A stretch of 64,000 nucleotides of DNA from Macrostomum lignano (taxonomy: Eukaryota). Made by a program: the position numbers and the translations under genes. A model generated the notes under the pieces. That model worked only from the letters and a program-made list of their open reading frames with translations, was not told where the DNA came from and searched no databases. Of this stretch, positions 1-63,415 are shown piece by piece (the first letter of the stretch is position 1; every line of letters begins with the position of its first letter). The stretch lies in assembly GCA_002269645.1 (NCBI GenBank), contig NIVC01000598.1, positions 1 to 64,000 of the forward strand. Reading direction: 5' to 3'.

Positions 1-134
1 TTTATGAATTCACAGTCATTTCTTCACAATAGTGATTTTCTTGAAATCTATTCATAAGGTTATGAATTTCTACTTACTCTTTTATTTAAATTATAACTTT
101 TTTATTTGATTTATTGATATGGCGTTTACTACTT

Positions 135-890
135 GTCTGTGAGTCGCATTCTCCAATGCACGGCTGGTCAATGATTTGTGCTAAGTGGGTGCCACAAGAG
201 CTGACAGAAGAACACAAAAAGCATGGGTGCAATTTTTGGCAGACAACTGGGCTGCATGGAACGAGCTTGGTGATAAGAAGTTCAAGGAGCTTATAATCAC
301 AATGAATGAGACGCCGCTGCCAATGTTTAATCCATTGACAAAGTAGCAGTCAATGCAGTGGGGGCCAAAGAGATGGCTACCACACACAGAGGCCATGAAG
401 TCAGCCTGGACCCAGAAGCCAGAACATCATGTGCATAGTGTGGTTTGATGTGCAAGGCATGTTACTCATTGATTACCTACCGCAAGGCCAGACAATCAAT
501 GCCAACTATGTGATTAACCAGCTCAAGCAACTGCGTGCTGCCATTCTATCCAAGTGCCAAATCATGCGTCAGAAGCCATTTATCCTTTGGGACAATGTGC
601 ATCCGCATGCTGCTACTTGCACTCGCGCCAAGGTAGAAGAGCTGGGCTTTTGTCAGCTAAGTCACCCAGCCTATAGGCCCAACCTCATGATTGCCAATTT
701 CCATCTCTTCGGTCCAATGAAGTTACCAATGCGTGGGCAAGTTTTCACAACATGTCAGGAGGTCATTGATGCCGCTAATGCATTGCTGCACTAGCTGGAC
801 TCTAGCTTCTAGAAGGCTGGGTTTGATAATCTGATTGAATGCTATCAGAAACAGAAATATAGCATTTAATGGTGAATATATGGAGTGCAA
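135..890 (+). pseudogene. Degenerate Tc1/mariner (mariner DD34D-type) transposase remnant
   Basis: Mariner motifs occur in order across frameshifts and stops: CAKWVPQELT (WVPHEL), IITMNET (GDE, first D lost), QSMQW, VWFDVQG, WDNVHPH (HDNARPH), HPAYRPNLMIANFHLF (YSPDLAPSDFHLF), terminal NGEYME. No TIRs identified. Confidence 0.85.
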
Positions 891-5769: not shown

Positions 5770-8700
5770 ATGGCCGCAGTGACTGTTCGCCTCTACAGAG
5801 ATCTCTGCAGACGCCCTGGGGCTTTCGAGTGCAGGGCGGTGCCGATTTTCATACTCCGCTCACCGTGCAGCGCGTGAGTCTCTGCTGGCTGTTGAGCCAG
5901 CTTGCTTTCGTCTCATTTGGACAAACTTGTTTATCATTGATGGAACTTGATAGTTTACACTTCTCCGGCAAGCTAAGACGCCATCTTCGCACTCCTGCTT
6001 CTGAAGATTTATTAGCAGGCTGAGCTTGAATTTCTAATTAGCATGAGCTGAGAAGACGCTTACCATCAGTACGCTGCAAGTTTAGTGTAGACAGAGTTGA
6101 CTTTGTACCAGACGTCTAAGCAGTCCTGGTTTTGGAACTTCTGAAAGTTATGAATTTTAAAATCAATTACACTGAATTCAGTCTGTCATGCTTACCTCTG
6201 ATGCGATGCAGACCACATTCTCAGATGCTTTGGAGGCCACTTCACCAGATTAATCCATTCATTCCTCCCTCATCCAGGTGTTCACCGGCAGCCCGGCGGA
6301 GGGGGAGCTCCATCGGGGCGACACGGTGGTCGGTATCGACAACTACGACGCCACGACCATGCTGCACAGCGAGGCGCAGGATGTCATCAAGAACAGCGGC
6401 GGCACCCTGCTGCTCAACATTCGCAGGTCTGTCGGAAAATCGTTTTCCCCTAGTTTTCAAGCAGGACTGGAAACGCCAAGACACCCTACCCTAGAAAATA
6501 TCCTAGCCGATCATGGCTGTAAATTCAGGGAAGCAGTTTAAAGCAGACATCATGAAGCCATGAAGCTTCTGATTCTGTCCGGTCGTTTGTGATCCTGAGG
6601 GATTCTGAGCAAACTTTGGGTTCTGCTCCAGAGTCCAAGTACATGTAGGAATGAAACTTTCATTTTGTCTCATTGATCCACTGGAAGCGTAAGGAAGGGA
6701 TCTGGATGGGATGCCTCGGCATTTTCTAGTCATCTGATCGGGCAAGTTATCGATTGCGGTAAATTTGGTCCGGAGCTTCAGTTCGGCCTCCATTCCGGCG
6801 CTTAAGTTTCATTTTGACTTTTAGTCTACTTCTCGGGAAATGATGAAGAGAGAGCTGTCAAAATCGATTTCGACCAAAAAGCTTTCTGATATTCATACCA
6901 AAAAACCATGCAACTCACTGAAGATGTGTGCATAATTTGCGGATGTGCCTTTACAAGCGTAGCCTTTCTGCAAAATGCGACCCATTGACACACTGAGACC
7001 AAGCCGTTTTTGTTTCACTGTTAATTTATCTCCTGACACCCTGGCTACACTTCTGACATTTCTCCTTCGCTCCTGACTCTTTTGATCCTGCCACGCTTAG
7101 CTTCTCTGGTTCTTTTTGTTGTTTTTTGTTGACAACCCCACGGCTGACACCAAGCCTTCAACTCGCCTTTCACCTTTGCCCACCTCGCGCCCGCTCCGTC
7201 AGACCGCACGGAGCGGTTCCGCCGTCGCAGTCGAGCCGGGCGATGGCTGCCGTCTCGGCCGCGCCTCCCCACAGCCGGGTACCCTCGCAGCCCACGTGGC
7301 GGCCAAGCGGCCCCCGGCCGGAATTCGGCGTCCAGTACGGCGGCAGCCCGCGTGGCCGCGCCGCCAGCAGCCGGTGATGGCGCCGCAGCATCAGCAGCAC
7401 CAGCAACAGGCTGACAACTACATGATGGATCGGGTGAGATTGAGTTTATGTTCTGTTTTATTTTAATCTGGAAACATCATTTCAGTTTTCGCTACTCTTA
7501 GTAGTTAAGCCGAGATCATAAAGACGTTTTTTAAGGCGAAGAGAAGAAAGATTATGATGCAGTATGGTAGCGCATGACAGTAGAACTACAAGCCATAATG
7601 ACCTTTTCTACCAGGGGTTCTTGGTAGCCAAAGAGAAAAATGAGATTGTTTTCAAAATCTCTCATGAATTTTGCGCAAAGCAGTTTAAAAGTACGCTTGG
7701 TTTCATACTTTATTGCTCAATATGCTTGGCTAAGAACCCCAACCGTAGACTTCGCCGTACTTGGATGAATTAGAATTATTTTTGTACGTTTTTTACTTTA
7801 GCATTTCACGCAAGCCAAACCCGCGGTATGCCGACGCTTGAACCGAATGGGCAAACAAAAAATAGAAAAAATTAGTAAAAAGAGGCACCAGCGAGGAGAG
7901 ACTTCGTGGGCGTCGCTTTCAGCCCGACGCGTACTGTCTGAAGGCTTCTGGGGAATTTTCTCCGGACTATCTACTAACCTCGTAGCGGCAGGATTCAGCG
8001 GCTGACATTTCACAGGAGGCTGGAGGAGGGGAGAGCGGGCGGGGCGGAACTTCGAGTGCAGAAATCAATGGCCTCACACTGGCCGGGCAGGCGGTCCGAA
8101 TCCCCTCTTCCCCTCAGGCGCCCAGCGCTCCAGCAAATGAGGCGCGCTGCTGAAAACCGGCAAGACTAAACACGCCGGAAGCACCCGCGCGTACTATAAA
8201 TTGTCTCGCCGCCTTAGCTGGCTGAGGGAAAATTCCACCCCAGGGTGATACGACTGCAAAGTGGATCACACTACTCACTCTGAGTAGTAGTAAGTAACCA
8301 CTCATGCCGGCGGGAAGCTGCGGCAGTTGCGGCCTTTGTGGTCAATTCTTTGTTGACGATCAACTGTGCGCCCTCCGGCTGGAGGACCTGCCCGGGTTCG
8401 AGCTCCGCGTGCATACGGTGGAGGCCCACCTGCTGCGGGACTTGGGCCGCATTGGCTGCTGCTGCTGCGCCTGCCACGGTGGCTCCGGCCGGCATCGCCG
8501 GGGCGACTCATTTCCCAGCTTCCTTGAGCCGCTTCAACAACAGCTTCTCGTCGTCCCCCGCACTCGCCGATTGCAGGTGAGCCGCTCCCTCGCCACCATG
8601 GACCTGCAGGCCGCGGCGCAGAGGTCCATGGACGACCAGGACGTGGACTACGCCTTCACCCAGCAGAGCGTGGCCGACCGCAGGAAAGCATTCATGCAGC

Positions 8701-11700
8701 CGACCAGCTACGGAAACACCTACCATTCGGGTGAGTTGCTGAGATGAGTGGCCCGCAGCTTCTGACCAAATTAATTGAAGCATTTGCATTTGATCATATA
8801 ATCGGTAGCTATGGTCTCAATTTCACAGGTTTGATTGATACAAACCCAATAAATATTGAAATATCACTGACGCAAACAATTTGCAGGTCTACGCAGAGCA
8901 TTTGACGGTAAATGCGCGACTCATAAATCAAACCAAAAAAATATTTTCTCAAGTTTTGACCCCAGTTCATTCCTGCTCAAGCTGCTGCTGGCTGTTTGAA
9001 AAATCGTTTCATGACTGCCCCATCGCACTGTTATGCAGATTAACTGTAAAGTATTTTTAGAACCAACGCAGAAAGCCTTCCGCTGTGCCGTGTTGACTGT
9101 TTATACCTCATCTACCCCGAATAAGCTGCCTGATTGGACACAGGTGCAAATAATCGCAAAAAATCTGCTTGCAGAAGAAATCTGTCCAGTGCGATCCCTC
9201 CCGAGACAGAAAGAATAAATAAACACAAAATTAGGGCGCAAACTGGTTTAAGAAAGCTAAGACCAGATTTCGGTAATAATTACAAAAAGTGGTTAGAACT
9301 CCCTGGGAAAAGTCTTCTAGAAACTTTGAAAGCGTCACCGCTATTGCGTTGCACTCACCGAACTTCCTTTTGCCCACCAGAGTCGATGCTAACAAAGCGT
9401 GCGTCGGTTTGGCTCTCTGTTCAACCCTAGTGTGTATTGAATAAAACCGTACTGACATTGATCTTTTTTACCATGGATAGCCAAACACGACCCCAAATTC
9501 ACTCCTACAATGCTTCTACAAACCGCACATTGCTATCCGATTACACGCCCCATTGTCTACATGCACTTTCCAAAGAAAAATGCATTTTAAGGCACCCAGA
9601 CGCATTTTAGCAGCCAGTCCAACCTCTCTACTCTGCAGTGCCTCGGCCCAACTCGTCGGGCTCGGCTGCTGCCAACCGGTACCGGCAGAAGCGCCAGCCC
9701 GACCCGGTGCTCGGCCAGCGGGTGCCGGAGTTCGGCTGGACGCCGTCGCCCGATCTTCTGCGCCAGGCGCGCAGAGGCCCCTCATCGGCGGCCTTCGAGC
9801 AGCAGTCGTACCTACCCTCGCAGGGCCAGGGTGTCAGGGAGGACAGCCCGTTCAGGGCCGGTCGAAGCCATGGAGGTCGCGGAGCTCACGGAGATCATGG
9901 AGGCTTCGGAGGCCACGGCGGAGGTCCCGGAGGTCACGTAGGTCATGGAGGCCACGGCGGCGGTCACGGAGGCCACGGCGGCGGTGGCAGGCAGCGCTCG
10001 TCGGCCATGCTCCGTCTAAACAGCACGGGCGGAGGCGCCGAAGATCCGCCGGCGGAGGTGCCGGTGGCGTTCAATAATAAGCAGTACAACACGCCCATCA
10101 ACATGTACTCCAAGCAGAATGTGGCCACGGCTTTTGAGGGCCAGACGGGCATCGCGCTCGGCCCGGGGTGAGTAAAGCCCTGCAGTGAGTCACGACTGAG
10201 TGCATACTGGGTCCAAATGACGTCTCGGGATGGTTTAGCAATTCAGAGGCTTGCATTACTTGCAATATTCGGAACCTTTTGCAATAAAACGGTCAAACGT
10301 GACTGAGGGATTCAGCCTGTAGAGCGGAATAAAAAATCGAGTCAAATTTTACCTATACCTGGGCATGTCAGTCAGTGCGCCAGTCAGATTGCGAGAAAAC
10401 TGTCAATAGCTTCCGAAATGTCTGGATGTATTTTTAAATCAACACATTCTAAGACTACTGCCTGGTTGGAGTCACGCCAGAGGACCAATTATTTAGTATA
10501 GCCAAAAGAACACCGAGCATAAGGTAGAATGCCAAACTTTTCAACTGAAGCTGAAGCCAACAATGCGGCTTCCCGCGGGGCATCTACTTTTTGACCATAG
10601 ACAGCAATCACGCAGAAAGCCCCTTTTCTGCCCTAGAAAGCCTGAATGATTAATATATTCTCACAATTGTCTATGGTAGAGGCCAAATCTGCGACTAAAT
10701 CAAACTTACTTCACCCAGAGGTAAGCAAATTTAGATCAAATATTATACATACACTGGGCCACTCATTAACCACTTATGTGGCCATAGAAGCTAATGTAAA
10801 AAAATTTTGCAACTCGCGACAGCGCGAAAATCAACTACTGAACTTGTTTTCCCCAGTAGTATCGTCACTTTCTCAGTAGTCTCTGCAGTGCATGCACCAT
10901 TCTTTGTTTGATTGAGTAGCTTTTTATTTAATTCATGAAAAGCTCTATCAAATCATACTCAAAAATAGCGTTTATGTCCCTAAGCTATACTAAGCTGTCG
11001 GTTTTTCGCACAAGTGACGAAAAACAGCGGTCGCACTTTCCCTTAAGACTTAAGACGCACTTAAGACGTACCGCAATACAAAGTGGTCTATCTAGAGAAT
11101 ATAAGATCCATGCTTTAGACTAAATACATTTCACTTCGGCCCAAAAACACAGTTAAATGGTATACTAAACAGACTGCTGTCTATGGTCAAATAGTAAATG
11201 CCCGTGAAGCTGCATTATTGGCAATTCAGCTGCAGCTTCAAACTTCGGCATTCTACCTAATGCTTGGAACATAGCCAATGCGCAGTACAAAGTTTGAATT
11301 TCTAATGCCTTCGTTTGTCTGGAACACTGACAAACAAATCTTCTTATTCCTATTTATTTCTTATTCCTGAATTAAACAAACTCGAAAGATGTAGATCTTT
11401 TCTGAAAAATTATAACAACGTCAAGAACAGGTTGGTAAATCAGTGTCTGTCTTCACGTCATCTGAAGCTTTATTCCTGAAGGAGTTCCGCTTCACAGGCA
11501 CCGTTTTTGAGAAGAGATGGGATCCATCACGCACTTGTGTGAGCAGCATTTGAAGTCATAGAAACAATTCCAGCCTTTCCCAAGACAATACATTCTGCAG
11601 GCACTTGAGCAGCCTGCAATCATAAATATGATATGGTTATTCTGTTAATTTTCACTTAGCAATTTATTAATTACGAGCGTAGTCAATTAGTTGAGTAAAA

Positions 11701-12868
11701 AAACTCAAGTTTAGCAAAACTCACCGAGAAGTGTGAGCAGCACAAACAGAACTAGCAGCAGGCTCTTCATCTCGGATCTTGTGATCGTGCGGTCCTCTTA
11801 GTGAGTAAAGTTAAACTGGAGCAGCGTGTAGCTGGTGCTGCGAGGTTTCGGGCTCTGAGGGTTGACTTTCACTCTTAAATCCAGTCAAACCAAGCTCTCC
11901 TGTACCGAAGTATCAACTGAGTTGAATGCTGATGTCTATGGCACAAACTTGCGGGGTATTCGGGGACTACAGGGCCGAAAAGCTTCAATTCAATTGTCTA
12001 TGGCCAGGATGCCAACTCTAGGAACTCTAAACTCTCGATACAGTTAAGTGTTTTCTCAGCCATAATACCATAGACACATCAAAGAGACCAATGATTTTGT
12101 TTAAGGCGGATTTATAGATTTTGTTTCGTTAAAGCTGCACTCACAGGCTTATCAACGTTCATGAAATGCTACCGGAGACTACCAATCAAGCAAATTTCCA
12201 GCTAAATTCCGATAATGCATTAACTTTAAGGAAGACTTTTTTTAAGGACGAGGGACGACTCTTATCTTATCATATAACTTTTTTTCTCGATATACTTGCT
12301 TCGTTTGGGATGTAGAAGTCCAGAAGGCGGGGTATTAGAAATTCAGTGATACAAGAAACAAAAGCTTCTTATGTCGTGAGTGCATTTTGCCGAAAAAAAC
12401 AACCCTTACATGCCGATAAACCGATGAGATGGTATTCAATTGATCATGACATCTTTATAGGTGGACACTATAAAAATACCCTGATTTAAAAGATATCTTA
12501 AGAAACTTTAAAATCTAAACCTTGGAAGATGATGCAGAGTAAGAGTAACTAGAGGCGGAACATCACTAGGCTACACTGGAACTACTGATACGACATCAAC
12601 CAGACAAAAGTCTTAGAACGAGTTGGTTTGGTCTGCGCACTAAGGCGGGTCATCAAAAAGTGACCCCATTTGCCCGGCCAACAGCCAACAGGCGCAGGAG
12701 CCGGCCTACATGCAGTCGCAGGTGTACAAGCTGGTGCACGAGCAGGACAACCAGCGCCAGCGCCAGCGCCACCAGAATCACCACCAGCCGCAGCCGCAGC
12801 CGAAGTCGGCCCCGGCCTGGGTGCGCCAGCAATCCGACGGTGACGAGTTTGGCGTGTCCGAGTTCTGA
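5770..12868 (+). CDS. PDZ + ZM-motif protein (Zasp/ALP/PDLIM family), no LIM exons found
   Basis: Exons with GT-AG and consistent phases: 5770-5873, 6278-6426, 7203-7433, 8577-8730, 9639-10167, 12685-12868 (TGA). PDZ: [36 protein letters not shown]...HSEAQDVIKNSGGTLLLNIRR. ZM motif: NKQYNTPINMYSKQNV, followed by QSQVYKLVHE. Two 1-bp deletions (~5803, ~7360) must be corrected. Confidence 0.88.
8195..8576 (+). promoter_or_regulatory. Putative internal TATA promoter and alternative first exon (PDZ-less isoform)
   Basis: TATAAA at 8195-8200. ATG 8304 opens a GC3-rich frame (MPAGSCGSC...) that runs without a stop into exon 4 (VSRSLATMDL). Confidence 0.45.
10513..11267. mobile_element. MITE-like element with ~95-bp imperfect terminal inverted repeats
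   Basis: 10513-10607 (CCGAGCATAAGGTAGAATGCC...TTGACCATAGACAGCA) is the reverse complement of 11174-11267 (TGCTGTCTATGGTCAA...GGCATTCTACCTAATGCTTGG). No coding interior. Confidence 0.65.
11492..11770 (-). CDS. Secreted cysteine-knot (ICK/knottin-like) peptide, nested antisense in the last intron of the PDZ-ZM gene
   Basis: Exon 1 11770-11725, phase-1 GTGAG..TTGCAG intron, exon 2 11613-11492. Product is 55 aa: MKSLLLVLFVLLTLLGCSSACRMYCLGKGWNCFYDFKCCSHKCVMDPISSQKRCL*. Hydrophobic signal peptide, C-X6-C-X5-CC-X3-C-X10-C spacing, AATAAA at 11474-11469. Confidence 0.85.
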
Positions 12869-14866: not shown

Positions 14867-15172
14867 TGTTCTGGAGCTGCCACTGTCTCGTGGTATTTCT
14901 TAAACTTTTCGTTTGCAATAGCTACATGTACGTTCAATTAGGCTAACATATTTATTTTGCTCATACGTACAGTCCCTAATTATTGATCGCACCACTTTCA
15001 TTCTTCACTGATCGCCCCACCCCACATTACGCTCACGTGTATTGTACGCTTTCACTCAGCTCATTAAATATATCGACCCAGAGCATCTCGCTCAAGAGCC
15101 CCTTTTCGTTTTTCATCGTTTCAATAGCGCAGCATATAGTTTGTCTTTCATCTCGAGTTATTCTAGCAACCA
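14867..15172 (+). repeat. 5' LTR
   Basis: TGTTCTGGAG...TAGCAACCA. No difference from the 3' LTR seen by eye. Confidence 0.95.
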
Positions 15173-15174
15173 TT

Positions 15175-15192
15175 TGGTAGCAGAGCGTGGTT
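15175..15192 (+). other. Primer-binding site complementary to initiator tRNA-Met 3' end
   Basis: TGGTAGCAGAGCGTGGTT lies 2 nt after the 5' LTR. TGGTAGCAGAG...GGTT is the reverse complement of the metazoan tRNA-iMet 3' end. Confidence 0.75.
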
Positions 15193-15236
15193 ACTCAAGC
15201 CACAGTACATCGTGTCCAATAGTCTGTTAGATCAGT

Positions 15237-17036
15237 ATGAGCGACGACGAAAAACAGAAGCAAGCGCCAGAGCCCGATGTTGCTTCGCTGAATGCTCTGA
15301 GGCGACAAAAGACCAAGTTCAAATCTGCGCTGACCAAGAATCGAAATAAACTGGCCTGGCTATTACAAGACGGTTCTGACAAGAGCGAAATTCAGCACCA
15401 ATGCGAAGCCGTAACCGAGATCTTCGAGGGAACAATCGAGGCGCTGTATGAGTTGAGCGACGAGTTGCAACGAAACAACAGCGACGCAGCACAGCACTCT
15501 CGGCTGCTCGATGAAATAGAAACCGTCGAGGAGGACTACCGCGTCAGCATGCGAGAGGTCCAGCGTTTCCTAGCAACTCAGCAGTCACCATCTGCAGCGG
15601 CACAAGTTCCTCAGGAGACAGCGGCAGCGTCGGCAGCAGAGCCGGCGGCAGAGTCGGCGGCAGCGACAGCCCAATCGCTGGGTGCAGTCAATCTAGATCG
15701 GCAAATCGGATTCAGTGTTGCAGAGCCGGACTTCATGCGAGGACAGAGACAGCAGAGGCCCTACAGAGACCTAGGTGAGTTTGGCTACCTGCCTTCTTCA
15801 AATCAGCATGCGGGTTTCGAGATGAGAGCGGAGGATCGAACAAGCTCTTCTGAATCAGTAGACGAATGCAGGCTCGGCAACTCTTCGGAGCAAGAGCTGT
15901 CGAAGGATCTCTGGAAGATGTTGCGCAGAGTGGAGATTCCAACATTCTATGGCGACAAGCAACAGTATGAAGCGTGGAAGGCTGCCTTCATGGCTTGCAT
16001 CGATAGGGCTCCAGCAACACCAGAGTTCAAACTGCTGCAGTTGCGTCAGTATTTGCGTGGATCAGCGCTGAAGGTAATAGAGCACTTGGGTCATTCGGCT
16101 GCTGCCTATCAGGCGGCCAAGGAGAGATTGGAGCGTGAGTACGGCGGCAAGCGACGACAGTTGGCGCACTACTTGGAAGAGCTAGATAGTTTTCCACCCG
16201 TGAAGCAGAATAGTGCCGAGGAGCTGAAGAAATTCGCGAACATCCTCGATGTGGCTGTAATTAATTTGGAAGAAGCTGGTAAGAACTCCGAACTTAGTGA
16301 TGGACTGCTTTATGCTAGATTGCAAAAAAAGTTACCAGAGCCGATGGTCGCAGCATTTCGACGATGGATCTTCGAGAAGGCGAAAGCAGAAGGCGTTAGG
16401 ACCCTTCGAGAGTGGGTTTTGCGTGAGGCAGAGTTCCGGACTGAGGCAGCAGAAATTGTGTACGGGGTGGCCGCATCGAGTCAGGAGCAACCAAGAAAGG
16501 ACAGCAAGCAGAAGGCCTTCCATGTAGCACAGCTAAGCAAGAGCTCAAGCAAGGGGAGCTACTCCTGTGTAGTCTGCAAGGAGGCGCACGATCTATGGAA
16601 GTGTCCCGCATTCGGGAAACTGTCGTCTGAGAACAGATGGAAGGCTGCTCAGGAAGCCAAAGCCTGTTTCCGCTGTCTTGGCCATGGTCACAACGGTATG
16701 AACTGCCGACGAGGTCGAAAGTGCGGCGTTGATGGATGCACCAAATCCCACCATCGTCTGCTGCATTCGACAGCAAGGTCGGAATCGAAAGAGAAGTCAG
16801 AAGTCAAAGTCGGTGCTGAGCAAGAAATGCAGTCGAAGCCGAAAGCTGCAACCGTGACAATGGTCGCTAGAGAAGCCAGTGCGGTTTCACTTCGAACGGT
16901 TCCGGTCATTCTTAAGGCGAATAGGCGAGCGGTGAAGGTCAATGCCTTACTTGATGACGCCAGCACAAAGACCTATTTGAATACGGCGATAGCATCCAAG
17001 CTTGGCCTGCACGGAAAACAGGAATCAATCAGGTAA
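15237..17036 (+). CDS. BEL/Pao Gag + N-terminal part of aspartic protease
   Basis: DUF1759-type IPTFYGDKQQYEAWKAAF region. Three Cys/His knuckles: CVVCKEAHDLWKC, CFRCLGHGHNGMNC, CGVDGCTKSHHRLLH. Protease motif ALLDDAS. Confidence 0.9.
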   Translation: MSDDEKQKQAPEPDVASLNALRRQKTKFKSALTKNRNKLAWLLQDGSDKSEIQHQCEAVTEIFEGTIEALYELSDELQRNNSDAAQHSRLLDEIETVEEDYRVSMREVQRFLATQQSPSAAAQVPQETAAASAAEPAAESAAATAQSLGAVNLDRQIGFSVAEPDFMRGQRQQRPYRDLGEFGYLPSSNQHAGFEMRAEDRTSSSESVDECRLGNSSEQELSKDLWKMLRRVEIPTFYGDKQQYEAWKAAFMACIDRAPATPEFKLLQLRQYLRGSALKVIEHLGHSAAAYQAAKERLEREYGGKRRQLAHYLEELDSFPPVKQNSAEELKKFANILDVAVINLEEAGKNSELSDGLLYARLQKKLPEPMVAAFRRWIFEKAKAEGVRTLREWVLREAEFRTEAAEIVYGVAASSQEQPRKDSKQKAFHVAQLSKSSSKGSYSCVVCKEAHDLWKCPAFGKLSSENRWKAAQEAKACFRCLGHGHNGMNCRRGRKCGVDGCTKSHHRLLHSTARSESKEKSEVKVGAEQEMQSKPKAATVTMVAREASAVSLRTVPVILKANRRAVKVNALLDDASTKTYLNTAIASKLGLHGKQESIR

Positions 17037-17038
17037 AC

Positions 17039-20000
17039 GTGTTGAACGGACAGGTGGAAACCTTCATAACAGCACCAGTGTCATGCACCTTGGAGAGTAC
17101 TGACGGCCAAATAAGCAAGGAGATTACTGCGCTGACGGTAGATAGAGTGACAGGGAACATGGAAGTAGTAGATTGGCAAGAATTGGCGTCGAAATGGTCG
17201 CACTTAGCAAACATTCCGTTTCCAAGAATGCAAACGCCAGCGGAGGTTGACTTGCTGATCGGAGTCGATCACCCAGACTTGCATGCATCACAGTTGGAAG
17301 TGACCGGCGACCCCGGAGATCCGCAAGCGCGGCTGACACCTTTAGGTTGGACTTGTATCGGTAGAGTTGATGGAGCTTCGGAGCACGCGTTGTTTGCAAA
17401 CACGTTCTTCAGCCGAGGCGGGTCTGAGAATCTAGCGCCACTGTTACGCCAGTTTTGGGAAGTAGAAGAGGTGAGAAGCATCGAACCATCTTCATTTACT
17501 AATGCAGAGCAGCTCGCTTTGGAAAGAACTCGATCATCGCTAAAGTTCTTCGATGGGCGATACCAAGTTGGCATTCCGTGGAAACCGGATGTCACGTTTA
17601 ATGATAGCAACTTTGAAATGGCTATCAGGCGGCTTGCAAATACCGAGAAGAGGCTCCGCAAAGATCCGGATCTAGCAAAGCAGTATCAGGACGTCATCAG
17701 TCGCTACGAAAATGTTGGCTACATCAGAAGAGTACTGGAGCATGAGCAACAACCAGCGAACAGGTATCACCTTCCTCATTTCCCAGTGGTTCGAATGGAT
17801 AAGGCAACTACCAAAGTGCGCATCGTCTTTGATGCTTCAGCTGGCGGTGAGGAGTCGTTGAATAGCCTGATGCTGGCAGGACCGAAGCTTCAGAAAGATC
17901 TGGTTGATGTGCTCCTGCGCTTCAGGAGGCATCCAGTGGCGGTTGCTTGCGACATTTCTGAAATGTACTTGCAAATCGCGATCGCACCAGAAGATCGGGC
18001 AGCGCACAGCTTTCTGTGGCGGGACATGGATCCGACAAAGGTACCACAGACATTCGAGTTCAACCGAGTGGTTTTTGGAGCAACGAGCTCACCATTTCTG
18101 GCGCAATTCGTGACTCAGGAGCACGCAAAGAAGCTGAAGCAGGAGTTTCCATCGGCCGCAGAAACAGTGCTCCAGTCAACTTACATGGATGACTGCCTGG
18201 ATTCGAAGAAGACTGATTCAGAGGCTATTCAGTTGTATCAGGAGCTGAGCCAATTGTGGGAGCGAGCTGGTATGCACGCTAGGAAGTGGATTTCAAACTC
18301 GAGAGCATTGCTTGCGTGTGTAGCACCAGAGGATAGAGTCGCGGAGGTGAGCCTGGATGGTCAGCCGTTGCCAGTTTCGAAGACGCTTGGAGTAGTCTGG
18401 AAAAGTGAGGACGATGAATTCACCTTTGTTGCTGATAGCGAGCTGAGACCAGTCAAGTCAAAGAGGATTCTGCTAAAGAGATTGGCTTCAATGTACGATC
18501 CTCTCGGATTGATAGCACCTTTCACCGCGCAGGCAAAGATACTACTGCAGGAGCTCTGGTGCAGCGGCCTTGATTGGGATGAAGCGCCGGACGAGGCTCT
18601 GCAAAGGAGGATTCAAGCATGGTGTGCTGACCTGACGAAGCTGAACTGCTTTCGAGTTTATCGCTGTCTGCAGTTCTCTTGCGTACCTACGCAGTCTCAG
18701 CTTCACTGCTTTGTCGATGCTTCGGAGAAGGCCTACGGAGCAGTGTGTTATCTACGATGCAAGTACACCGACGCCTCGATATCCGTTCGGCTCATCGCTG
18801 CCAAGTCTCGAGTTGCACCCATAGCAACTATGAGCATTCCGAGGCTGGAGCTGATGGCAGCGGTCATTGGGCTGAATCTAGCGGTCAAGATTGCCAAGGC
18901 ACTAGAGATGAACATCAAAGATGCGGTATTCTGGTCGGACAGCATGAACGTTCTGTTTTGGATTCGTGGAAGAGGACGCTTCTTTAAACCGTTCGTTGCG
19001 AATCGCATCGGAGAAATCCAGCAGGCAACTGATCCGAACCAGTGGAGACACGTGCCAACGGCGTGCAATCCTGCCGATCTGCTGTCAAGAGGCGCAACGA
19101 TAACTCAGCTGGCCGAGGATCAGAAATGGAAAAACGGTCCAGAGTTTTTACATCATGACGATTACAAGTGGCCAAGTACCAGGTTGGAGCGACCAGCAGA
19201 CCTGGAGACGAAAGGTTCGGCGAAAGATTCAGTCCCGTCCGAAACGGTCATGTCTGCAACAATGGTCACCAGCGAGCAAAGAAAGCATCAAGTAGAGCGG
19301 CTTGATCCGAGCAAGTTCTCCAGCTGGATGAAATTCCTGAGGGTAAATGCCTGGATTAGCAGATTTTCCAACAATTGTCGCTTCGAACCACAGTACCGAA
19401 CTCGAGGAGAGCTGCAGGCGTCGGAGCTAGAAGACGCGGAGTTAAGAATCATCAAGGATGTGCAGCAAGATGCATTCAGCACGGAGCTTTCCGCCTTGAG
19501 GAAGAACAATAGCGTTTCTGAGAGCAGCAAGCTGGCTAGAATGCATCCCAGACTCGATCCTAGCGACGTTCTTCGCTCAGAGAGTCGTCTACAGTTGGCC
19601 GAAGCATTGCCGGTTAGTATCAGATCACCAATCATCTTGCCAAAGTGCCATCACGTGACAGAATTGATAATCAAGCACCATCACGAAAAAGCGTATCACG
19701 CGGGCACCAATCAAGTACTTGCTGCAGTGACTGCTCGATTTTGGATCCCAGCTGCCCGAGAGGCCATCCGAGCTTGGGAAGTCAAGTGTGCTGAGTGCAG
19801 GAGAAGAAAGGCACAGCCAGCTTCGCAGTTGATGGCACCACTGCCTCCCAGTCGGCTAGAACCGTTGAGAGCATTTACGAAAGTATCAATAGATTTCGGA
19901 GGTCCATTCCTGACGAAACAGGGTCGGGGACGTGTGCGTCAGAAGCGGTACTTTGCGCTCTTCACTTGTATGGCAACGCGTGCAGTTCATTTAGAAATGG

Positions 20001-20770
20001 CGTACGGCCTTGATGCAAGCAGCTTCCTAAACGCGTTGTTTCGCATGATCAATCGCCGAGGTCAAGTTCTGGAAATCTTCTCAGACAATGGAACTAATTT
20101 TGTTGGTGCGGATAGAGAACTAAAGGAGCTGTGCAAGTCGATGGACAAGAACGCATTGCAGTCACGCACATCTCACGTACCGATCAAGTGGCACTTTAAT
20201 CCGCCCGCGGCTCCGCACTTCGGCGGCGTGCATGAGTCAATGATAAAATCAGCAAAGAGAGCGATAAACGCGATCCTGAGATCGGCAGAAGTCAGCGATG
20301 AGCAGCTTGTAACAGCATTTACCGGAGCAGAGTTGCTGCTGAACTCACGGCCTTTGACCTACCAGTCGTCCCATCCTGGTGACGATCCGGTCCTGACGCC
20401 AGCGCACTTCCTGTACGGGCACGTTGGCGGACAGCTGGCACCGGAGATCTCGGCTGACGAGGTGTTCAACCCAACCAAGCGGTGGCGCTACGTGCAGCGG
20501 CTGGTGCAGTCGTTTTGGCGGCGATGGCTTCGAGAGTGGCTGCCCGGCCTCGGTGCGAGAACCAAATGGCGGCGAGAGCAGCCCGACCTCAAGCCTGGGG
20601 ACGTCGTGCTGTATGTCTGTCCGGACAGCCCTCGGGGTCATTGGCCACTGGCTCGAGTCCTGGAGGTGTACCCGGGTCGAGACGGCCATGTTCGAGTAGT
20701 AAAAGTGCAGCTGGCGGACAAGGTTCTGACGCGGCCAATCAACAGACTGTGCCCATTGATTACTGATTGA
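17039..20770 (+). CDS. BEL/Pao Pol (protease C-term, RT, RNase H, integrase, DUF5641-like tail)
   Basis: KVRIVFDAS, YMDD, LHCFVDASEKAYG, HH..H..C..C integrase zinc finger, DFGGPF/SDNGTNF/HESMIK (DDE), WRYVQRLVQSFWRRW. This frame is open from 16958. Confidence 0.93.
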   Translation: MLNGQVETFITAPVSCTLESTDGQISKEITALTVDRVTGNMEVVDWQELASKWSHLANIPFPRMQTPAEVDLLIGVDHPDLHASQLEVTGDPGDPQARLTPLGWTCIGRVDGASEHALFANTFFSRGGSENLAPLLRQFWEVEEVRSIEPSSFTNAEQLALERTRSSLKFFDGRYQVGIPWKPDVTFNDSNFEMAIRRLANTEKRLRKDPDLAKQYQDVISRYENVGYIRRVLEHEQQPANRYHLPHFPVVRMDKATTKVRIVFDASAGGEESLNSLMLAGPKLQKDLVDVLLRFRRHPVAVACDISEMYLQIAIAPEDRAAHSFLWRDMDPTKVPQTFEFNRVVFGATSSPFLAQFVTQEHAKKLKQEFPSAAETVLQSTYMDDCLDSKKTDSEAIQLYQELSQLWERAGMHARKWISNSRALLACVAPEDRVAEVSLDGQPLPVSKTLGVVWKSEDDEFTFVADSELRPVKSKRILLKRLASMYDPLGLIAPFTAQAKILLQELWCSGLDWDEAPDEALQRRIQAWCADLTKLNCFRVYRCLQFSCVPTQSQLHCFVDASEKAYGAVCYLRCKYTDASISVRLIAAKSRVAPIATMSIPRLELMAAVIGLNLAVKIAKALEMNIKDAVFWSDSMNVLFWIRGRGRFFKPFVANRIGEIQQATDPNQWRHVPTACNPADLLSRGATITQLAEDQKWKNGPEFLHHDDYKWPSTRLERPADLETKGSAKDSVPSETVMSATMVTSEQRKHQVERLDPSKFSSWMKFLRVNAWISRFSNNCRFEPQYRTRGELQASELEDAELRIIKDVQQDAFSTELSALRKNNSVSESSKLARMHPRLDPSDVLRSESRLQLAEALPVSIRSPIILPKCHHVTELIIKHHHEKAYHAGTNQVLAAVTARFWIPAAREAIRAWEVKCAECRRRKAQPASQLMAPLPPSRLEPLRAFTKVSIDFGGPFLTKQGRGRVRQKRYFALFTCMATRAVHLEMAYGLDASSFLNALFRMINRRGQVLEIFSDNGTNFVGADRELKELCKSMDKNALQSRTSHVPIKWHFNPPAAPHFGGVHESMIKSAKRAINAILRSAEVSDEQLVTAFTGAELLLNSRPLTYQSSHPGDDPVLTPAHFLYGHVGGQLAPEISADEVFNPTKRWRYVQRLVQSFWRRWLREWLPGLGARTKWRREQPDLKPGDVVLYVCPDSPRGHWPLARVLEVYPGRDGHVRVVKVQLADKVLTRPINRLCPLITD

Positions 20771-21379
20771 AGGCTGACTATGACTCACTGATCGATGGAC
20801 TGTAACTGTTAATCCCTGTGTCGATTCGTATTTTCGTTTTCGTCATTTTGTCATTATCATTTTTGTCGCTTTCTAGACAGTGTTTTTTTCGGTATGCGAA
20901 TGATTACTTAGTTTTATTTTGTTTGTTTGTCAAATACGTTTATTTCAGTCATGTTTAAATTTTGAGTTTGGTGTTTGCCTTCGTAATTTAGGTTGTTAAT
21001 TTTTTGAATCGATTATTATTTATATCGTAATCCAAATTTAACCATGTTGCATCGCGATTTCACGTTGTCCTTTGTCTTGTAATCACATCACTCTCTGGTA
21101 ATGGGTTGATCGTCTTAAAATCTTTTTTCGTGAAATGCTATACAACTGCAGTTTATGTTTTCGAACTCAAGCGCGTTTCTTTTTTTTCTACATTTTTCGT
21201 TACTGTAACAGAGCCCACCAAGACAATTTTGTTTAGTCAAGTTTTGTACAAGTACGAATTGCGTAAGTTCTGCGTTATAACTTTTTCTGCATCTTTATCT
21301 CATAGGTTTTGCTTCCACTGCCACTCATTTTCAAAATTACATTTTTGCATCATTATTTTGTTTTTGCCATAGACATGTC

Positions 21380-21390
21380 AAGGTGGGGGG
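21380..21390 (+). other. Polypurine tract
   Basis: AAGGTGGGGGG lies 2 nt upstream of the 3' LTR. Confidence 0.7.
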
Positions 21391-21392
21391 TA

Positions 21393-21698
21393 TGTTCTGG
21401 AGCTGCCACTGTCTCGTGGTATTTCTTAAACTTTTCGTTTGCAATAGCTACATGTACGTTCAATTAGGCTAACATATTTATTTTGCTCATACGTACAGTC
21501 CCTAATTATTGATCGCACCACTTTCATTCTTCACTGATCGCCCCACCCCACATTACGCTCACGTGTATTGTACGCTTTCACTCAGCTCATTAAATATATC
21601 GACCCAGAGCATCTCGCTCAAGAGCCCCTTTTCGTTTTTCATCGTTTCAATAGCGCAGCATATAGTTTGTCTTTCATCTCGAGTTATTCTAGCAACCA
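21393..21698 (+). repeat. 3' LTR
   Basis: 306-bp copy of the 5' LTR, followed by TSD TCCTG. Confidence 0.95.
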
Positions 21699-23132
21699 TC
21701 CTGATTTCTTAGTAGAACTGGACAAGCTTATCCGGATTTCTTAATAGAACTGGACAAGCTTATCCTGATTTCTTAGTAGAAATGGACAAGCTTATCCGGA
21801 TTTCTTAGTAGAACTGGACAAGCTTATCCGGATTTCTTAGTAGAACTGGACAAGCTTATCCGGATTTCTTAGTAGAACTGGACAAGCTTATCCGGATTTC
21901 TTAGTAGAAATGGACAAGCTTATCCGGATTTCTTAGTAGAACTGGACAAGCTTATCCGGATTTCTTAGTAGAACTGGACAAGCTTATCCGGATTTCTTAG
22001 TAGAACTGGACAAGCTTATCCGGATTTCTTAGTAGAACTGGACAAGCTTATCCGGATTTCTTAGTAGAACTGGACAAGCTTATCCGGATTTCTTAGTAGA
22101 ACTGGACAAGCTTATCCGGATTTCTTAGTAGAAATGGACAAGCTTATCCGGATTTCTTAGTAGAACTGGACAAGCTTATCCGGATTTCTTAGTAGAACTG
22201 GACAAGCTTATCCTGATTTCTTAGTAGAACTGGACAAGCTTATCCGGATTTCTTAATAGAACTGGACAAGCTTATCCTGATTTCTTAGTAGAACTGGACA
22301 AGCTTATCCGGATTTCTTAATAGAACTGGACAAGCTTATCCTGATTTCTTAGTAGAACTGGACAAGCTTATCCGGATTTCTTAATAGAACTGGACAAGCT
22401 TATCCTGATTTCTTAGTAGAAATGGACAAGCTTATCCGGATTTCTTAGTAGAACTGGACAAGCTTATCCGGATTTCTTACTAGTAGTAGTAAAACTGGAC
22501 AAGCTTAACCCGACTTCTTAGTATACAACAGGACAAAGACCCAATTTGTAGCAAAACGCTTTAATAGAAAAAATATGTCGAGACATGTAGAGTAAATAAA
22601 GGAGATTAAAGATGATTACATAGGGAGTATTAAAGCCTAGAGTAATGTATGATGGATAATGTATGCCACACAATAAAAAACTTAAACAAAGGTAAAATTG
22701 TTACAAATTGAGTAAAGTGCACAGCAGGTAATAAGCAGTTAAAAAGAAATGGTTGCCCCAAGAAAAAACTAAAAATAAATTGAACTGATAATTTGCACCT
22801 ATCCATTTTATGCTACTTACAGTAGACAGTAAAACTACCCAGAAGAATTATGCAGAAAACTGGCATTTATTCATTGGATTTTTTCTAACTATCAACTGCT
22901 GAATTTGTCTTATACTGGTGCAGCTGTGCATGGGGTGCGTGCCCTTCACTTCCAGTGCGTCCCTTGCTAGTAGGAAGTGAAACATCTGTTTCTGAGCCAG
23001 CCACTGAGTTGTCATTTATCTAATAAATCTTGGTTCACGATGGGCATTACGAAAGGAAATTATCTATAAAACTTAGCGGTTGTCAGACTACGGTCGTAAG
23101 CTAACATTTCTTAACACTGAGCTCGACTCGGC

Positions 23133-47808: not shown

Positions 47809-48784
47809 TCGGTGATGCGGCGGACCCGTCTGATGCAGCTCGAACTTGTCAGGCTGGAGCCTCCCAGAGCCCTGATATGCGGATTGAAGGGGCCGGTAGC
47901 CGGTCTTAACGAAATTTCTGGCTCAGTATTGAGTTAGTGCCGTCTCTCTTTGCATTGTATTTATCTCGCGTCGGCGCTCAAACGAAGCGTCTCGCTGCTC
48001 CGCCCTCCGCCGCTTATGAGGTCTCAGAAAAAGTGTACGAGACGCGAAATTTTCCCTCGCCTCGCCTTGCCTTTTCCTGCCTTCCGCCCAAAAACTTTAC
48101 CGGCCGAGCGGGGTAACAGAGACGGCAGGCCGGGTGAAAAAGGATCCCCCCTTTTATTTCAAGGATGGCTGAGGACTTTCTGCTGTTGCCCCCGAGGCGG
48201 AGAGGAGGCGGGGGAAAACCGGAAAAGGAGAAGCCAGCCGGGAGAGGAAGAGTGAGAATAGGGGAGGAGGGCAAACTTCTCAGGACTGGCATCACCCCCC
48301 CGCATCGGTGGTTTCGGTTGGTGGCTGGCCGCTCTGGCGTCTCCTGCTTTCCCGCCGGCCGAATCGAATTACACAGGAGGCCTCCGAGAGCTACGCGGCC
48401 TCTTCAAGCCGGACGCACGCAGTTATGGCGCCGCGGAGTTTCGCTTAATTCTGTCGCCACTCGATTGCGCACACACTGGCAGCGGCGGCGCCCACATTGG
48501 GGATCTCACGGGGGCCCGCCGCGAGTGATGAATTCTTGCCGGTCACCGCCGCCTCTCCATCCCACTTTCCAGCACTTCTGCTGCAGTGCAAAGCTGTCTG
48601 ATGGCTGCGGCTAAGGTGCACTGCGGGACTGGGTAGAGCAGGATCAAGAGAGCGGAGAGGAGGATGTAGATGAACCTGGGGAAAGCATGATTTCTCATTA
48701 TTTTCTCTGTCGTCTTTGGAAGCCACCTTCATGTCCCCATCGCAGCAGAGCCCCTGTGTCTTCTGGGTCTTTTGGCACCTTTTC

Positions 48785-49535
48785 TGAGAACACCTTGGTC
48801 TTCTGGCACATTTTAAAGCACATCTTGTTCTTCTGGCACCTTTTATAGCGCACCTGTGTCTTCTGGAACCTTTTCTAGCGCACCTGTGTCTTCTGGCACC
48901 TTTTCTAGCACACCTGTGTCTTCTGGCACCTTTTCTAGCGCACCTGTGTCTTCTGGCACCTTTTCTAGCACACCTGTGTCTTCTGGCACCTTTTCTAGCG
49001 CACCTGTGTCTTCTGGCACCTTTTCTAGCACACCTGTGTCTTCTGGCACCTTTTCTAGCGCACCTGTGTCTTCTGGCACCTTTTCTAGCACACCTGTGTC
49101 TTCTGGCACCTTTTCTAGCGCACCTGTGTCTTCTGGCACCTTTTCTAGCACACCTTGGTCCTCTGGCACCTTTCCTATCGCACCTTGGTCTTCTGGCACC
49201 TTTTCTATCGCACCTTGGTCTTCTGGCACCTTTTCTATCGCACCTTGGTCTTCTGGAAACTTTCCTAGCATAACTTGGTCTTCTGGCACCTTTTCTAAGC
49301 ACACGTTGGTCCTCCGGCACCTCTTCAAGCGCACCTGTGTCTTCTGGCACCTCTTCAAGCGCCCCTAAGTCTTCTGGCACCTCTTCAAGCGCCCCTAAGT
49401 CTTCTGGCACCTTTTTTAGCGCCTCCGAGTCTTCTGGCACCTTTTCTATCGCACCTTGGTCTTCTGGAAACTTTTCTAGCACACCTTGGTCCTCTGGCAC
49501 CTTTTCTAGCGCACCTGTGTCTTGTGGCACCTTTT
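48785..49535. repeat. 30-bp tandem array (CACCTGTGTCTTCTGGCACCTTTTCTAGCG), ~25 units
   Basis: Central units alternate GCG/GCA (60-bp higher order). The minus strand reads EKVPEDTGAL repeats. Confidence 0.93.
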
Positions 49536-63350: not shown

Positions 63351-63415
63351 GTTCGAATAAGGGAGTCCGGTAAAAAATACTCGCAGGACTTGACTTTCTA
63401 ATCGTCAGGCATGTA

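What the first reader, a model, noticed from the sequence alone, without database searches (positions are those of the whole stretch)
11492..11770. Intron-nested antisense gene for a secreted inhibitor-cystine-knot (toxin/defence-like) peptide
Seen: a clean two-exon gene inside the last intron of the Zasp-like gene on the opposite strand, invisible to the ORF track. It has a signal peptide separated from the mature region by a phase-1 intron, a mature C-X6-C-X5-CC-X3-C-X10-C region and AATAAA ~18 nt after the stop. Established: C-C-CC-C-C is the knottin/ICK framework of conotoxin framework VI/VII, spider toxins and antimicrobial knottins. Inference: it may be an ion-channel-active venom/predation, antimicrobial or reproductive-gland peptide. 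Cleavage after SAC leaves exactly 6 Cys; cleavage after SSA leaves an odd seventh Cys available for dimerisation.
Basis: partly seen in the sequence, partly recalled or inferred. Interest (0 to 1): 0.85.

Follow-up and report, generated by a model that had tools for sequence, protein, structure and literature searches.

The report
Unannotated knottin-like secreted peptide gene
A small two-exon gene hidden on the opposite strand inside an intron of a muscle PDZ (Zasp-like) gene very probably encodes a secreted, cationic, six-cysteine peptide predicted to fold as a cystine knot, but it has no detectable relatives and nothing here shows that it is expressed or what it does.

Summary
On the minus strand, an ATG exon (11770-11725) encoding a signal-peptide-like segment ends at a consensus GTGAGT donor. 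A 111-nt AT-rich intron in phase 1 follows, then an exon (11613-11492) with the framework C-X6-C-X5-CC-X3-C-X10-C, a stop codon, and AATAAA starting 18 nt after the stop.

The cysteine pattern alone is not rare: a loose version occurs 0.19 times per shuffled window. The full conjunction is rare, about 2-7e-6 per window by my estimate.

AlphaFold2 on the single sequence gives the 34-residue six-cysteine form a mean pLDDT of 87. All 17 Foldseek PDB matches to that model are knottins, though none has a significant E-value.

Pfam and PDB sequence searches give only sub-threshold hits, all to knottin families: flatworm UPF0506, conotoxin I2 and omega-atracotoxin. Exhaustive protein searches, a metagenome scan and three related loci found no homologue or paralogue.

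Third-position GC is 0.60, above the surroundings (0.40) but far below neighbouring genes (0.81-0.92).

Verdict: probably a real, lineage-specific knottin-like peptide gene in a spiralian genome. Toxin or ion-channel function, expression and the "last intron" claim remain unproven. It is a new member of a known kind, of moderate interest.

The parts
11725..11770 (-). Exon 1 coding part: ATG plus 15 codons and 1 base. It encodes MKSLLLVLFVLLTLL(G), the n- and h-regions of a signal peptide.
   Evidence: Mean Kyte-Doolittle hydropathy of the best 11-residue window is 3.37, and it is one of only two such ATG + GTRAGT exons in the window. An in-frame TAA lies 10 codons upstream, at 11800-11798.
11614..11724 (-). 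Phase-1 intron of 111 nt, GTGAGT...TTAAC...TGATTGCAG. It splits codon Gly16, 4-5 residues before the likely signal cleavage site.
   Evidence: Read. GC is 0.28, against 0.48 for the CDS. Retention gives a stop after 19 codons.
11492..11613 (-). Exon 2 coding part: (G)CSSAC + RMYCLGKGWNCFYDFKCCSHKCVMDPISSQKRCL + TGA. It holds the signal c-region and the six-cysteine knottin-like domain.
   Evidence: It is the only ICK-pattern match in six frames of the window. AF2 pLDDT is 87 for the 34-aa form, and all Foldseek hits are knottins.
11469..11474 (-). AATAAA polyadenylation signal, starting 18 nt after the stop codon. T/GT-rich sequence follows about 40-60 nt downstream.
   Evidence: AATAAA frequency in the window is 5e-4 per nt.
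11873..11879 (-). Weak TATA-like TTTAAGA about 105 nt upstream of the ATG. It is a possible core promoter element and a speculative assignment.
   Evidence: Read only; not tested.
9611..10167 (+). Upstream flanking exon of the host Zasp-like gene. The frame is open from 9611; the ZM-type motif 'QYNTPINMYS' is at about 10080-10110; the donor GG|GTGAGT follows 10167. The 5' boundary was not determined.
12656..12868 (+). Downstream flanking exon of the host gene (DPICPANSQQ...QVYKLVHEQ...DEFGVSEF*). It is phase-compatible with the 10167 donor and ends in a TGA.
   Evidence: GC3 is 0.91.

Best explanation
This is a real but unannotated, lineage-specific protein-coding gene. It is transcribed antisense from within an intron of a PDZ/ZM (Zasp-like) gene.

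Proposed sequence of events:
1. The 111-nt phase-1 intron is spliced out.
2. The 55-residue precursor enters the secretory pathway through a roughly 20-residue signal peptide.
3. Signal peptidase cuts around SSA|C or SAC|R. There is no propeptide.
4. The 34-35-residue product (about 4.05 kDa, net charge about +4, aromatic cluster W/F/Y/F) oxidises into a three-disulfide inhibitor-cystine-knot fold with a C-terminal beta-hairpin.
5. The stable, cationic, amphipathic mini-protein most probably acts outside the cell by binding a membrane target, either an ion channel or receptor or the membrane itself.

What is shown: the sequence anatomy, the improbability that the conjunction arose by chance, and the predicted knottin fold.

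What is inferred: expression, the cleavage site, the disulfide connectivity and the target.
For: - The gene model is complete and consistent: ATG, upstream in-frame stop, GTGAGT donor, AG acceptor, phase match, stop codon and AATAAA.
- The joint chance of these features is about 2-7e-6 per 64-kb window.
- Exon and intron differ sharply in GC (0.48 versus 0.28). GC3 is 0.60 against flanks of 0.40, and the excess of GC3 over GC1/2 has an empirical p of 0.045.
- AF2 single-sequence pLDDT is 87.0 for the six-Cys form, with strands at 3-5, 15-17, 22-25 and 30-33.
- All 17 Foldseek PDB matches are knottins, including DkTx, psalmotoxin-1, SOTI-III, omega-agatoxin and omega-atracotoxin, with TM-score up to 0.71 and rmsd about 2 A.
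- The best PDB sequence hit is omega-atracotoxin-Hv1, with identical loop lengths 1-3 (E 0.2). The pairwise comparison gives 8/21 identities.
- The only Pfam hits to the mature peptide are knottin families: UPF0506 16.4 bits, Conotoxin_I2 16.2 and Omega-toxin 12.9. Seventeen shuffles with the Cys positions fixed never exceeded 15.0 bits and never hit UPF0506 or Omega-toxin.
- UPF0506 is described as a knottin fold of flatworm parasites that is found in a cestode secretome (PMC8400842). The window's TRPC-like gene matches flatworm proteins best, at 80-82%.
- Net charge is +3.8 and pI 8.9.
Against: - There is no transcript evidence of any kind.
- No homologue was found among 1.84 billion representative proteins, in the word-index search or in JGI metagenome contigs. 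There is no paralogue in the window.
- GC3 of 0.60 is far below the 0.81-0.92 of the window's bona fide exons.
- The polypyrimidine tract and the TATA-like element are weak.
- All family hits are below their curated thresholds, and 4 of 17 Cys-fixed shuffles also gave weak knottin-family hits. Much of that signal is therefore the cysteine spacing itself.
- Foldseek E-values are 3.6-8.1.
- Only 2 of the 5 AF2 models were confident. No Cys-fixed shuffle control could be folded.
- The most canonical signal cleavage (SSA|C) leaves an odd, seventh Cys.
Confidence: 0.6

Rival explanations
1. Chance conjunction. The region is ordinary intronic DNA that happens to contain a Cys-rich open frame, a hydrophobic ATG stretch, splice-like signals and an AATAAA. 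No gene product is made.
For: - Loose ICK patterns arise by chance 0.19 times per shuffled window.
- More than 20 other stop-free segments in the window have at least 6 Cys in 35 residues.
- No homologue was found anywhere.
- GC3 is 0.60 against 0.88 for real exons.
Against: - The joint probability is about 2-7e-6 per window. That corresponds to about 0.04-0.1 expected in a 1-Gb genome.
- The sequence folds confidently into a knottin in silico.
- It scores above 17 Cys-fixed shuffles against knottin families.
- Intron GC is 0.28 against exon GC of 0.48.
Confidence: 0.2
2. The gene is real and the peptide is a secreted knottin, but it serves host defence or host interaction rather than acting as a neurotoxin or ion-channel ligand. 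It could be an antimicrobial or membrane-active peptide, or, if the animal is a parasitic flatworm, a secretome factor like the UPF0506 proteins.
For: - The mature peptide is cationic (+3.8) with an aromatic cluster.
- The best Pfam score is to UPF0506, a flatworm knottin family found in the Schistocephalus secretome and expressed in schistosome parenchyma.
- There is no propeptide and no local gene expansion of the kind typical of venom families.
- The window's conserved gene matches flatworms best.
Against: - The UPF0506 score (16.4-16.7 bits) is below the gathering score of 23.2, and the match covers only profile positions 33-55 of 59.
- The closest solved sequences and structures are ion-channel toxins.
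- The organism was not identified.
Confidence: 0.3
3. Decaying or very young locus. It could be a pseudogenised copy or a retro- or transposon-carried fragment of a knottin gene whose functional paralogues lie elsewhere. It could also be a de novo ORF that is not yet under selection.
For: - Codon usage is intermediate (GC3 0.60, the same as the retrotransposon pol).
- A MITE-like inverted repeat lies about 200 nt away (10513-10609 / 11172-11267), and the intron is TE-rich.
- The host gene's first exon shows a frame inconsistency, so local sequence quality or decay is an issue.
Against: - The reading frame, all six framework cysteines, both splice sites, the stop and the poly(A) signal are intact.
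- The gene segment itself is unique within the window.
Confidence: 0.12

Closest known systems
Omega-hexatoxin / omega-atracotoxin-Hv1 family (Pfam PF06357; PDB 1AXH), insect calcium-channel blockers of funnel-web spiders
   Same: - The framework is the same, with identical lengths for loops 1-3 (C-X6-C-X5-CC-X3-C).
- Gly in loop 1, Tyr in loop 2, 'CCS' and the terminal 'KRC' are shared.
- It is the best PDB sequence hit (E 0.2), with 8/21 identities in the pairwise comparison.
- 1AXH is among the Foldseek matches.
- Both have a C-terminal beta-hairpin between Cys V and Cys VI.
   Different: - The Pfam score is 12.9 bits against a gathering score of 22.
- The last loop is 10 residues rather than 13.
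- The source is a spiralian, not a spider.
- There is no propeptide, and the gene has a phase-1 intron. Spider ICK genes are commonly intronless and encode propeptides (background knowledge).
- The resemblance is most likely convergent or framework-driven.
UPF0506 (Pfam PF11703), knottin-fold secreted proteins of parasitic flatworms
   Same: - It gives the best Pfam score (16.4-16.7 bits, E about 0.01). The match covers the C-X6-C-X5-CC-X3-C core, and none of 17 Cys-fixed shuffles reproduced it.
- The family is described as a knottin fold in Schistosoma and in the Schistocephalus secretome.
- The window's TRPC-like gene matches flatworms best.
   Different: - The score is below the gathering score (23.2).
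- Only profile positions 33-55 of 59 are matched, so the N-terminal half of the domain is absent.
- The last loop is not aligned.
- No UPF0506 member sequence could be retrieved for a direct alignment.
Conotoxins with framework VI/VII (O-superfamilies) and the I2 superfamily
   Same: - The cysteine framework is C-C-CC-C-C.
- The size is similar (about 30-35 residues) and the precursor is secreted.
- Weak Pfam hits were obtained to Conotoxin_I2 (16.2 bits) and Toxin_18 (8.9 bits).
   Different: - All scores are far below the gathering scores (27 and 24.3).
- A Cys-fixed shuffle reached 15.0 bits on Conotoxin_I2, so that hit reflects the cysteine framework only.
- There is no propeptide and no conserved O-superfamily signal sequence.
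- The gene has two exons, whereas conotoxin genes typically have three exons (signal, pro, mature) (background knowledge).
Alpha-nemertides (ICK sodium-channel toxins of ribbon worms; PMC5864730)
   Same: - The source is also a spiralian.
- As I recall nemertide alpha-1 (from memory, not tested here), loops 1-3 have the same lengths: C-X6-C-X5-CC-X3-C.
- They are epidermal or mucus-secreted knottins (abstract).
   Different: - The last loop is 5 residues rather than 10.
- The nemertide precursor has a pro-region (legend).
- No sequence comparison could be run, and there is no evidence that the window comes from a nemertean.

Membership tests
Inhibitor cystine knot (knottin) fold | Six cysteines in a C-C-CC-C-C arrangement within about 25-40 residues | tested here: met
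   The framework C-X6-C-X5-CC-X3-C-X10-C is at 11587-11498 on the minus strand.
Inhibitor cystine knot (knottin) fold | Disulfide connectivity I-IV, II-V, III-VI, with the third bond threading the ring | not testable with these tools
   Model coordinates are not exposed. Only pLDDT, secondary structure and Foldseek matches are available.
Inhibitor cystine knot (knottin) fold | Compact fold with an antiparallel beta-sheet or hairpin that superposes on solved knottins | tested here: met
   The AF2 34-aa model has pLDDT 87. All 17 of 17 Foldseek PDB matches are knottins, with TM-score up to 0.71 and rmsd 1.8-2.3 A for the best. E-values are 3.6-8.1, so none is individually significant. The 39-aa form with 8 Cys had pLDDT 68.9 and no Foldseek match.
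Secreted peptide precursor | N-terminal signal peptide: basic n-region, hydrophobic h-region, and small residues at -3 and -1 | tested here: inconclusive
   Lys2 is basic, the 13-residue h-region has mean hydropathy 3.37, and SSA|C or SAC|R satisfies the -3/-1 rule by inspection. No SignalP-type predictor was available.
UPF0506 (PF11703) | Score at or above the Pfam gathering score (23.2 bits) over the 59-position domain | tested here: not met
   The score is 16.7 bits for the precursor and 16.4 for the mature peptide. Only profile positions 32/35-54/55 are matched.
Omega-atracotoxin (PF06357) | Score at or above the Pfam gathering score (22 bits) | tested here: not met
   The score is 12.9 bits, E 0.098. 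PDB 1AXH gives E 0.2.
Conotoxin O-superfamily / I2 (PF02950, PF08087, PF17557) | Score at or above the gathering score; conserved superfamily signal sequence; propeptide between signal and toxin | tested here: not met
   Conotoxin_I2 scores 16.2 against 27, and Toxin_18 scores 8.9 against 24.3. PF02950 was not hit by the real sequence. The mature region follows the signal directly, so there is no pro-region.
Expanded venom/toxin gene family | Tandem or dispersed paralogues | tested here: inconclusive
   There is none within the 64-kb window. The rest of the genome was not available.

The most novel reading that the evidence does not exclude
The gene founds, or is the first recognised member of, a previously undescribed spiralian (possibly flatworm) knottin family. 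It may be a minimal, single-domain offshoot related to the functionally uncharacterised UPF0506 knottins. Its product would be a potent ion-channel or receptor ligand used in predation, defence or host manipulation. Because it is encoded antisense inside a muscle Z-disc gene, its transcription could be coupled to, or interfere with, the host gene.
Probability: 0.2. Interest if true: 0.55.

Novelty: new member of a known kind. Interest (0 to 1): 0.35.

Why it matters
If the gene is real, it is an example of the small, fast-evolving, cysteine-rich secreted peptides that standard annotation and ORF tracks miss. The causes here are a 43-aa longest unspliced ORF, the split signal peptide and the absence of homologues.

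Knottins are stable scaffolds with a record as ion-channel probes, insecticides and drug leads. A spiralian or flatworm knottin with omega-hexatoxin-like loop geometry would be a cheap candidate for synthesis and screening. It could also give a first functional handle on the uncharacterised UPF0506-type knottins of flatworms.

The finding does not change any concept. Knottin-like peptides and intron-nested antisense genes are both common.

Tried and rejected
Homology and literature searches that found nothing:
- The word-index homologue search of the precursor found nothing.
- The exhaustive HMMER search of 1.84 billion representatives gave one hit, P0001. It is a 321-aa internally repeated protein that scores through four summed stretches and has no knottin framework, so I rejected it as spurious.
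- The JGI metagenome scan had 600 pattern matches, none confirmed by tblastn.
- A full-text literature search for the peptide's own sequence strings gave 0 papers.
- An Rfam scan of the whole window at gathering thresholds gave 0 matches.

Synteny:
- I fetched loci around TRPC homologues in Hymenolepis diminuta (L001) and an ENA assembly (L002), and the JGI contig with the best PDZ hit (L003).
- L001 and L002 were screened and showed no adjacent Zasp-like exon and no ICK-like ORF. L003 was fetched and its gene table read, but it was not screened.
- No relative closer than about 85% TRPC identity or 57% PDZ identity exists in the databases. Orthologous introns could therefore not be examined.

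Host gene:
None is in the window.

Structure:
- The Foldseek search with the 39-aa model gave no hits.

Transposon hypothesis for the peptide gene:
- Self-BLAST shows that the gene segment is unique in the window. Only a neighbouring inverted repeat was found.

Nemertide comparison:
- The nemertide sequences are in figures, not in the searchable text.
Full report
**1. What is in the sequence**

All features below are on the minus strand.

- The ATG is at 11770, in the context GAG-ATG-A. An in-frame TAA lies ten codons upstream.
- The ATG opens 46 coding bases, MKSLLLVLFVLLTLL + G(1/3). These run directly into a consensus donor, GTGAGT, starting at 11724.
- The intron is 111 nt (11724-11614). 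It contains a TTAAC branch-like site and ends in TGATTGCAG.
- Exon 2 (11613-11492) completes Gly16 and continues CSSACRMYCLGKGWNCFYDFKCCSHKCVMDPISSQKRCL, then TGA.
- AATAAA is at 11474-11469 and starts 18 nt after the stop.

If the intron is retained, the frame stops after 19 codons. The knottin-like part can therefore be coupled to the signal sequence only by this splice.

The precursor has eight cysteines.

**2. Is it more than chance?**

The cysteine framework alone is not significant.
- A permissive ICK regular expression matches 0.19 times per dinucleotide-shuffled window, with at least one match in 26 of 150 shuffles. The exact framework never matched.
- The real window holds more than 20 other stop-free segments with at least six Cys in 35 residues, mostly in GC-rich repeats.

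The weight lies in the conjunction of features.
- Only two ATG-initiated, signal-peptide-like stretches followed by GTRAGT exist on both strands of the 64 kb. The candidate is the more hydrophobic of the two.
- One of them lies 111 nt upstream of the only ICK-pattern ORF in the window, in a compatible phase.
- The ORF stops one residue after the last Cys, and AATAAA (5e-4 per nt in this window) follows within 18 nt.
- Multiplying the empirical frequencies gives about 2-7e-6 per window. That is about 0.04-0.1 expected in a gigabase genome.

Composition points the same way, though not strongly.
- Exons have GC 0.48, the intron 0.28 and the flanks 0.40.
- GC3 is 0.60 against GC1 and GC2 of 0.42. 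An excess of that size is seen in 4.5% of stop-free non-coding segments.
- The neighbouring bona fide exons (Zasp-like and TRPC-like) have GC3 of 0.81-0.92. The candidate does not share the codon bias of conserved genes. This is the main intrinsic argument against it, or for its being young or weakly selected.

**3. Context**

*Host gene on the plus strand.*
- It has PDZ exons at about 5811-5875 and 6279-6427.
- A Gly/His-rich exon carries a ZM-type motif (QYNTPINMYS) and ends at the donor after 10167.
- A further exon runs 12656-12868. It joins the previous one in frame and ends in TGA.
- The peptide gene lies between these last two exons, on the opposite strand, so the nested antisense arrangement is confirmed.
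- 'Last intron' is not confirmed. No LIM-domain exon exists anywhere in the window. Either this is a LIM-less isoform or gene, or its 3' exons lie beyond the window.

*Organism.*
- The host PDZ region finds only distant relatives: 57% to a JGI contig, 52% to Pinctada and 46% to a fly Zasp.
- A TRPC-like gene on the minus strand (28.1-32.4 kb) matches flatworm TRPCs best, at 80-82% (Hymenolepis, Cichlidogyrus, Schistosoma, Sparganum, Fasciola). Molluscs follow at 76-78% and an annelid at 74%. Arthropods and vertebrates are at about 43%.
- The source is therefore a spiralian, possibly a flatworm, whose proteome is not in the databases.

*The gene segment.* It is unique within the window.

**4. 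What the peptide resembles**

*Homology searches.* No homologue was detectable.
- The word-index search found nothing.
- The exhaustive HMMER search of 1.84 billion representatives gave only a spurious repeat protein.
- The JGI metagenome scan found no relative.
- A literature search for the sequence strings found nothing.

*Sub-threshold family matches.* All of them are to knottin families.
- The precursor hits UPF0506 at E 0.0097 and 16.7 bits.
- The 34-residue form hits UPF0506 at 16.4 bits (gathering score 23.2), Conotoxin_I2 at 16.2 (27) and Omega-toxin at 12.9 (22).

*Shuffle control.* Seventeen shuffles with the cysteines held in place gave weak knottin-family hits in four cases. The best was 15.0 bits, and none hit UPF0506 or Omega-toxin. 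Most of the signal is therefore the cysteine spacing, with a small contribution from other residues.

*Solved structures.*
- Against PDB sequences the best match is omega-atracotoxin-Hv1 (1AXH, E 0.2). Loop lengths 1-3 are identical, and Gly, Tyr and CCS are shared.
- The pairwise comparison gives 8/21 identities.
- Both peptides also end in KRC-x. For the spider toxin this rests on my recollection of the full 1AXH sequence.

*Literature on UPF0506.* It is described as a knottin fold generally found in Schistosoma and was detected in the secretome of the cestode Schistocephalus solidus (PMC8400842). A upf0506 gene is a parenchyma marker in S. mansoni. Given the flatworm-leaning TRPC result, this is the most interesting lead, but membership is not demonstrated.

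**5. Predicted structure**

- AlphaFold2 without an alignment gave the 39-residue exon-2 product (eight Cys) a mean pLDDT of 68.9. Foldseek found no match for that model.
- The 34-residue six-Cys form reached a mean pLDDT of 87.0. Two of the five models were above 80. Strands are at 3-5, 15-17, 22-25 and 30-33, which amounts to a hairpin between Cys V and Cys VI plus a third strand at Cys III.
- Foldseek against the PDB returned 17 matches, every one a knottin. They include DkTx, PaurTx-3, omega-agatoxin, U4-agatoxin, spinach trypsin inhibitor SOTI-III, a remipede double-ICK toxin, psalmotoxin-1, GsMTx-4, omega-atracotoxin-Hv1 and robustoxin.
- TM-scores reach 0.71, with rmsd about 2 A over 32-34 residues. 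E-values of 3.6-8.1 are uninformative at this length.

Three caveats apply.
- AF2 may respond mainly to the cysteine framework.

**6. Most likely mechanism**

The gene most probably yields a secreted mini-protein of about 4 kDa.
- It is cationic (net +3.8, pI 8.9).
- It has an aromatic cluster (W9, F12, Y13, F15 in the 34-mer).
- It would be stabilised by three disulfides in a cystine knot.
- There is no propeptide, and the intron near the end of the signal sequence is in phase 1.

Such peptides act extracellularly by binding ion channels or receptors or by perturbing membranes. Which of these applies here is inference only.

Confidence estimates:
- About 0.6 that it is a real gene for a secreted knottin-fold peptide.
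- Much lower, about 0.2-0.3, for any specific target class.

Rival explanations:
- A chance conjunction (about 0.2).
- A defence or host-interaction role rather than neurotoxicity (about 0.3; this overlaps the main explanation on gene reality).
- A decaying or very young locus (about 0.12).

**7. Novelty and score**

Knottin-like secreted peptides are known from many animal phyla, plants and fungi, and nested antisense genes in introns are common. This is best filed as a new, orphan member of a known kind, not as a member of any named toxin family, because every family threshold tested was missed.

Interest is moderate (0.35). It is a good example of a gene that annotation would miss, and a cheap candidate for synthesis. 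Without expression or conservation data it stays a prediction.

Noticed in passing
window 5771-5875 (+): In the host Zasp-like gene's first coding exon, the ATG at 5771 opens '[11 protein letters not shown]...' in one frame. The PDZ start '[21 protein letters not shown]' is in a different frame, with no intron between them. One extra C in the CCC run would give [24 protein letters not shown]. This points to an assembly indel or a pseudogenising frameshift, or else to use of an upstream first exon with the acceptor ...tctctgcag|acg.
   Followed up: partly
window ~14867-21692 (+): LTR retrotransposon (BEL/Pao- or Gypsy-like by eye) with 100% identical LTR segments (14867-15166 and 21393-21692). 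The gag (15237-17036) and pol (17039-20770) ORFs are intact. It is apparently a very recent insertion into a 32-nt minisatellite (21698-22483).
   Followed up: partly
window 34225-40770: A 6.5-kb minisatellite of a 21-nt unit (TTGAGAGCTCTATGATTGTGT, about 270 copies, 93% matches). Strand asymmetry is strong, with GC skew about +0.5 and AT skew about -0.4.
   Followed up: no
window 41800-63350: The density of further minisatellite arrays is unusually high. Periods are 14-42 nt, for example at 46171-47391 (40 nt), 48763-49541 (30 nt), 49989-50868 (19 nt), 58959-60148 (21 nt) and 62688-63351 (21 nt). Some units recur at distant sites, for example the GHVLES-coding 21-mer at 51.2 kb and 59-60 kb.
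   Followed up: no
window 28147-32438 (-): TRPC-type cation channel gene, with ankyrin, TRP_2 and pore-region exons. The best named hits are flatworm TRPCs at 80-82% identity. GC3 is 0.81-0.92.
   Followed up: partly
window 10513-10609 and 11172-11267: Inverted repeat (81% over 99 nt) bounding a segment of about 755 bp in the same host intron, about 200 nt beyond the peptide gene's poly(A) signal. It may be a MITE-like element.
   Followed up: no
window-wide; exons listed: Codon bias is extreme. GC3 is 0.81-0.92 in conserved exons against about 0.40 GC in adjacent introns. The retrotransposon pol and the candidate peptide gene both sit at GC3 of about 0.60.
   Followed up: partly
window 114-794 (+): Fragmented mariner/Tc1-like transposase reading frames, for example '...WDNVHPHAATCTRAKVEELGFCQLSHPAYRPNLMIANFHLFGPMK'. 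They were recognised by eye only.
   Followed up: no
window 22866-22821 (-): The only other signal-peptide-like ATG stretch followed by GTRAGT in the window (MPVFCIILLGSFTVY). It is consistent with the chance background and was not examined further.
   Followed up: no
window ~9840-9990 (+): A Gly/His-rich low-complexity stretch (HGGFGGHGGGPGGHVGHGGHGGGHGGHGGGG) lies in the open frame of the host exon, upstream of the ZM-type motif.
   Followed up: no
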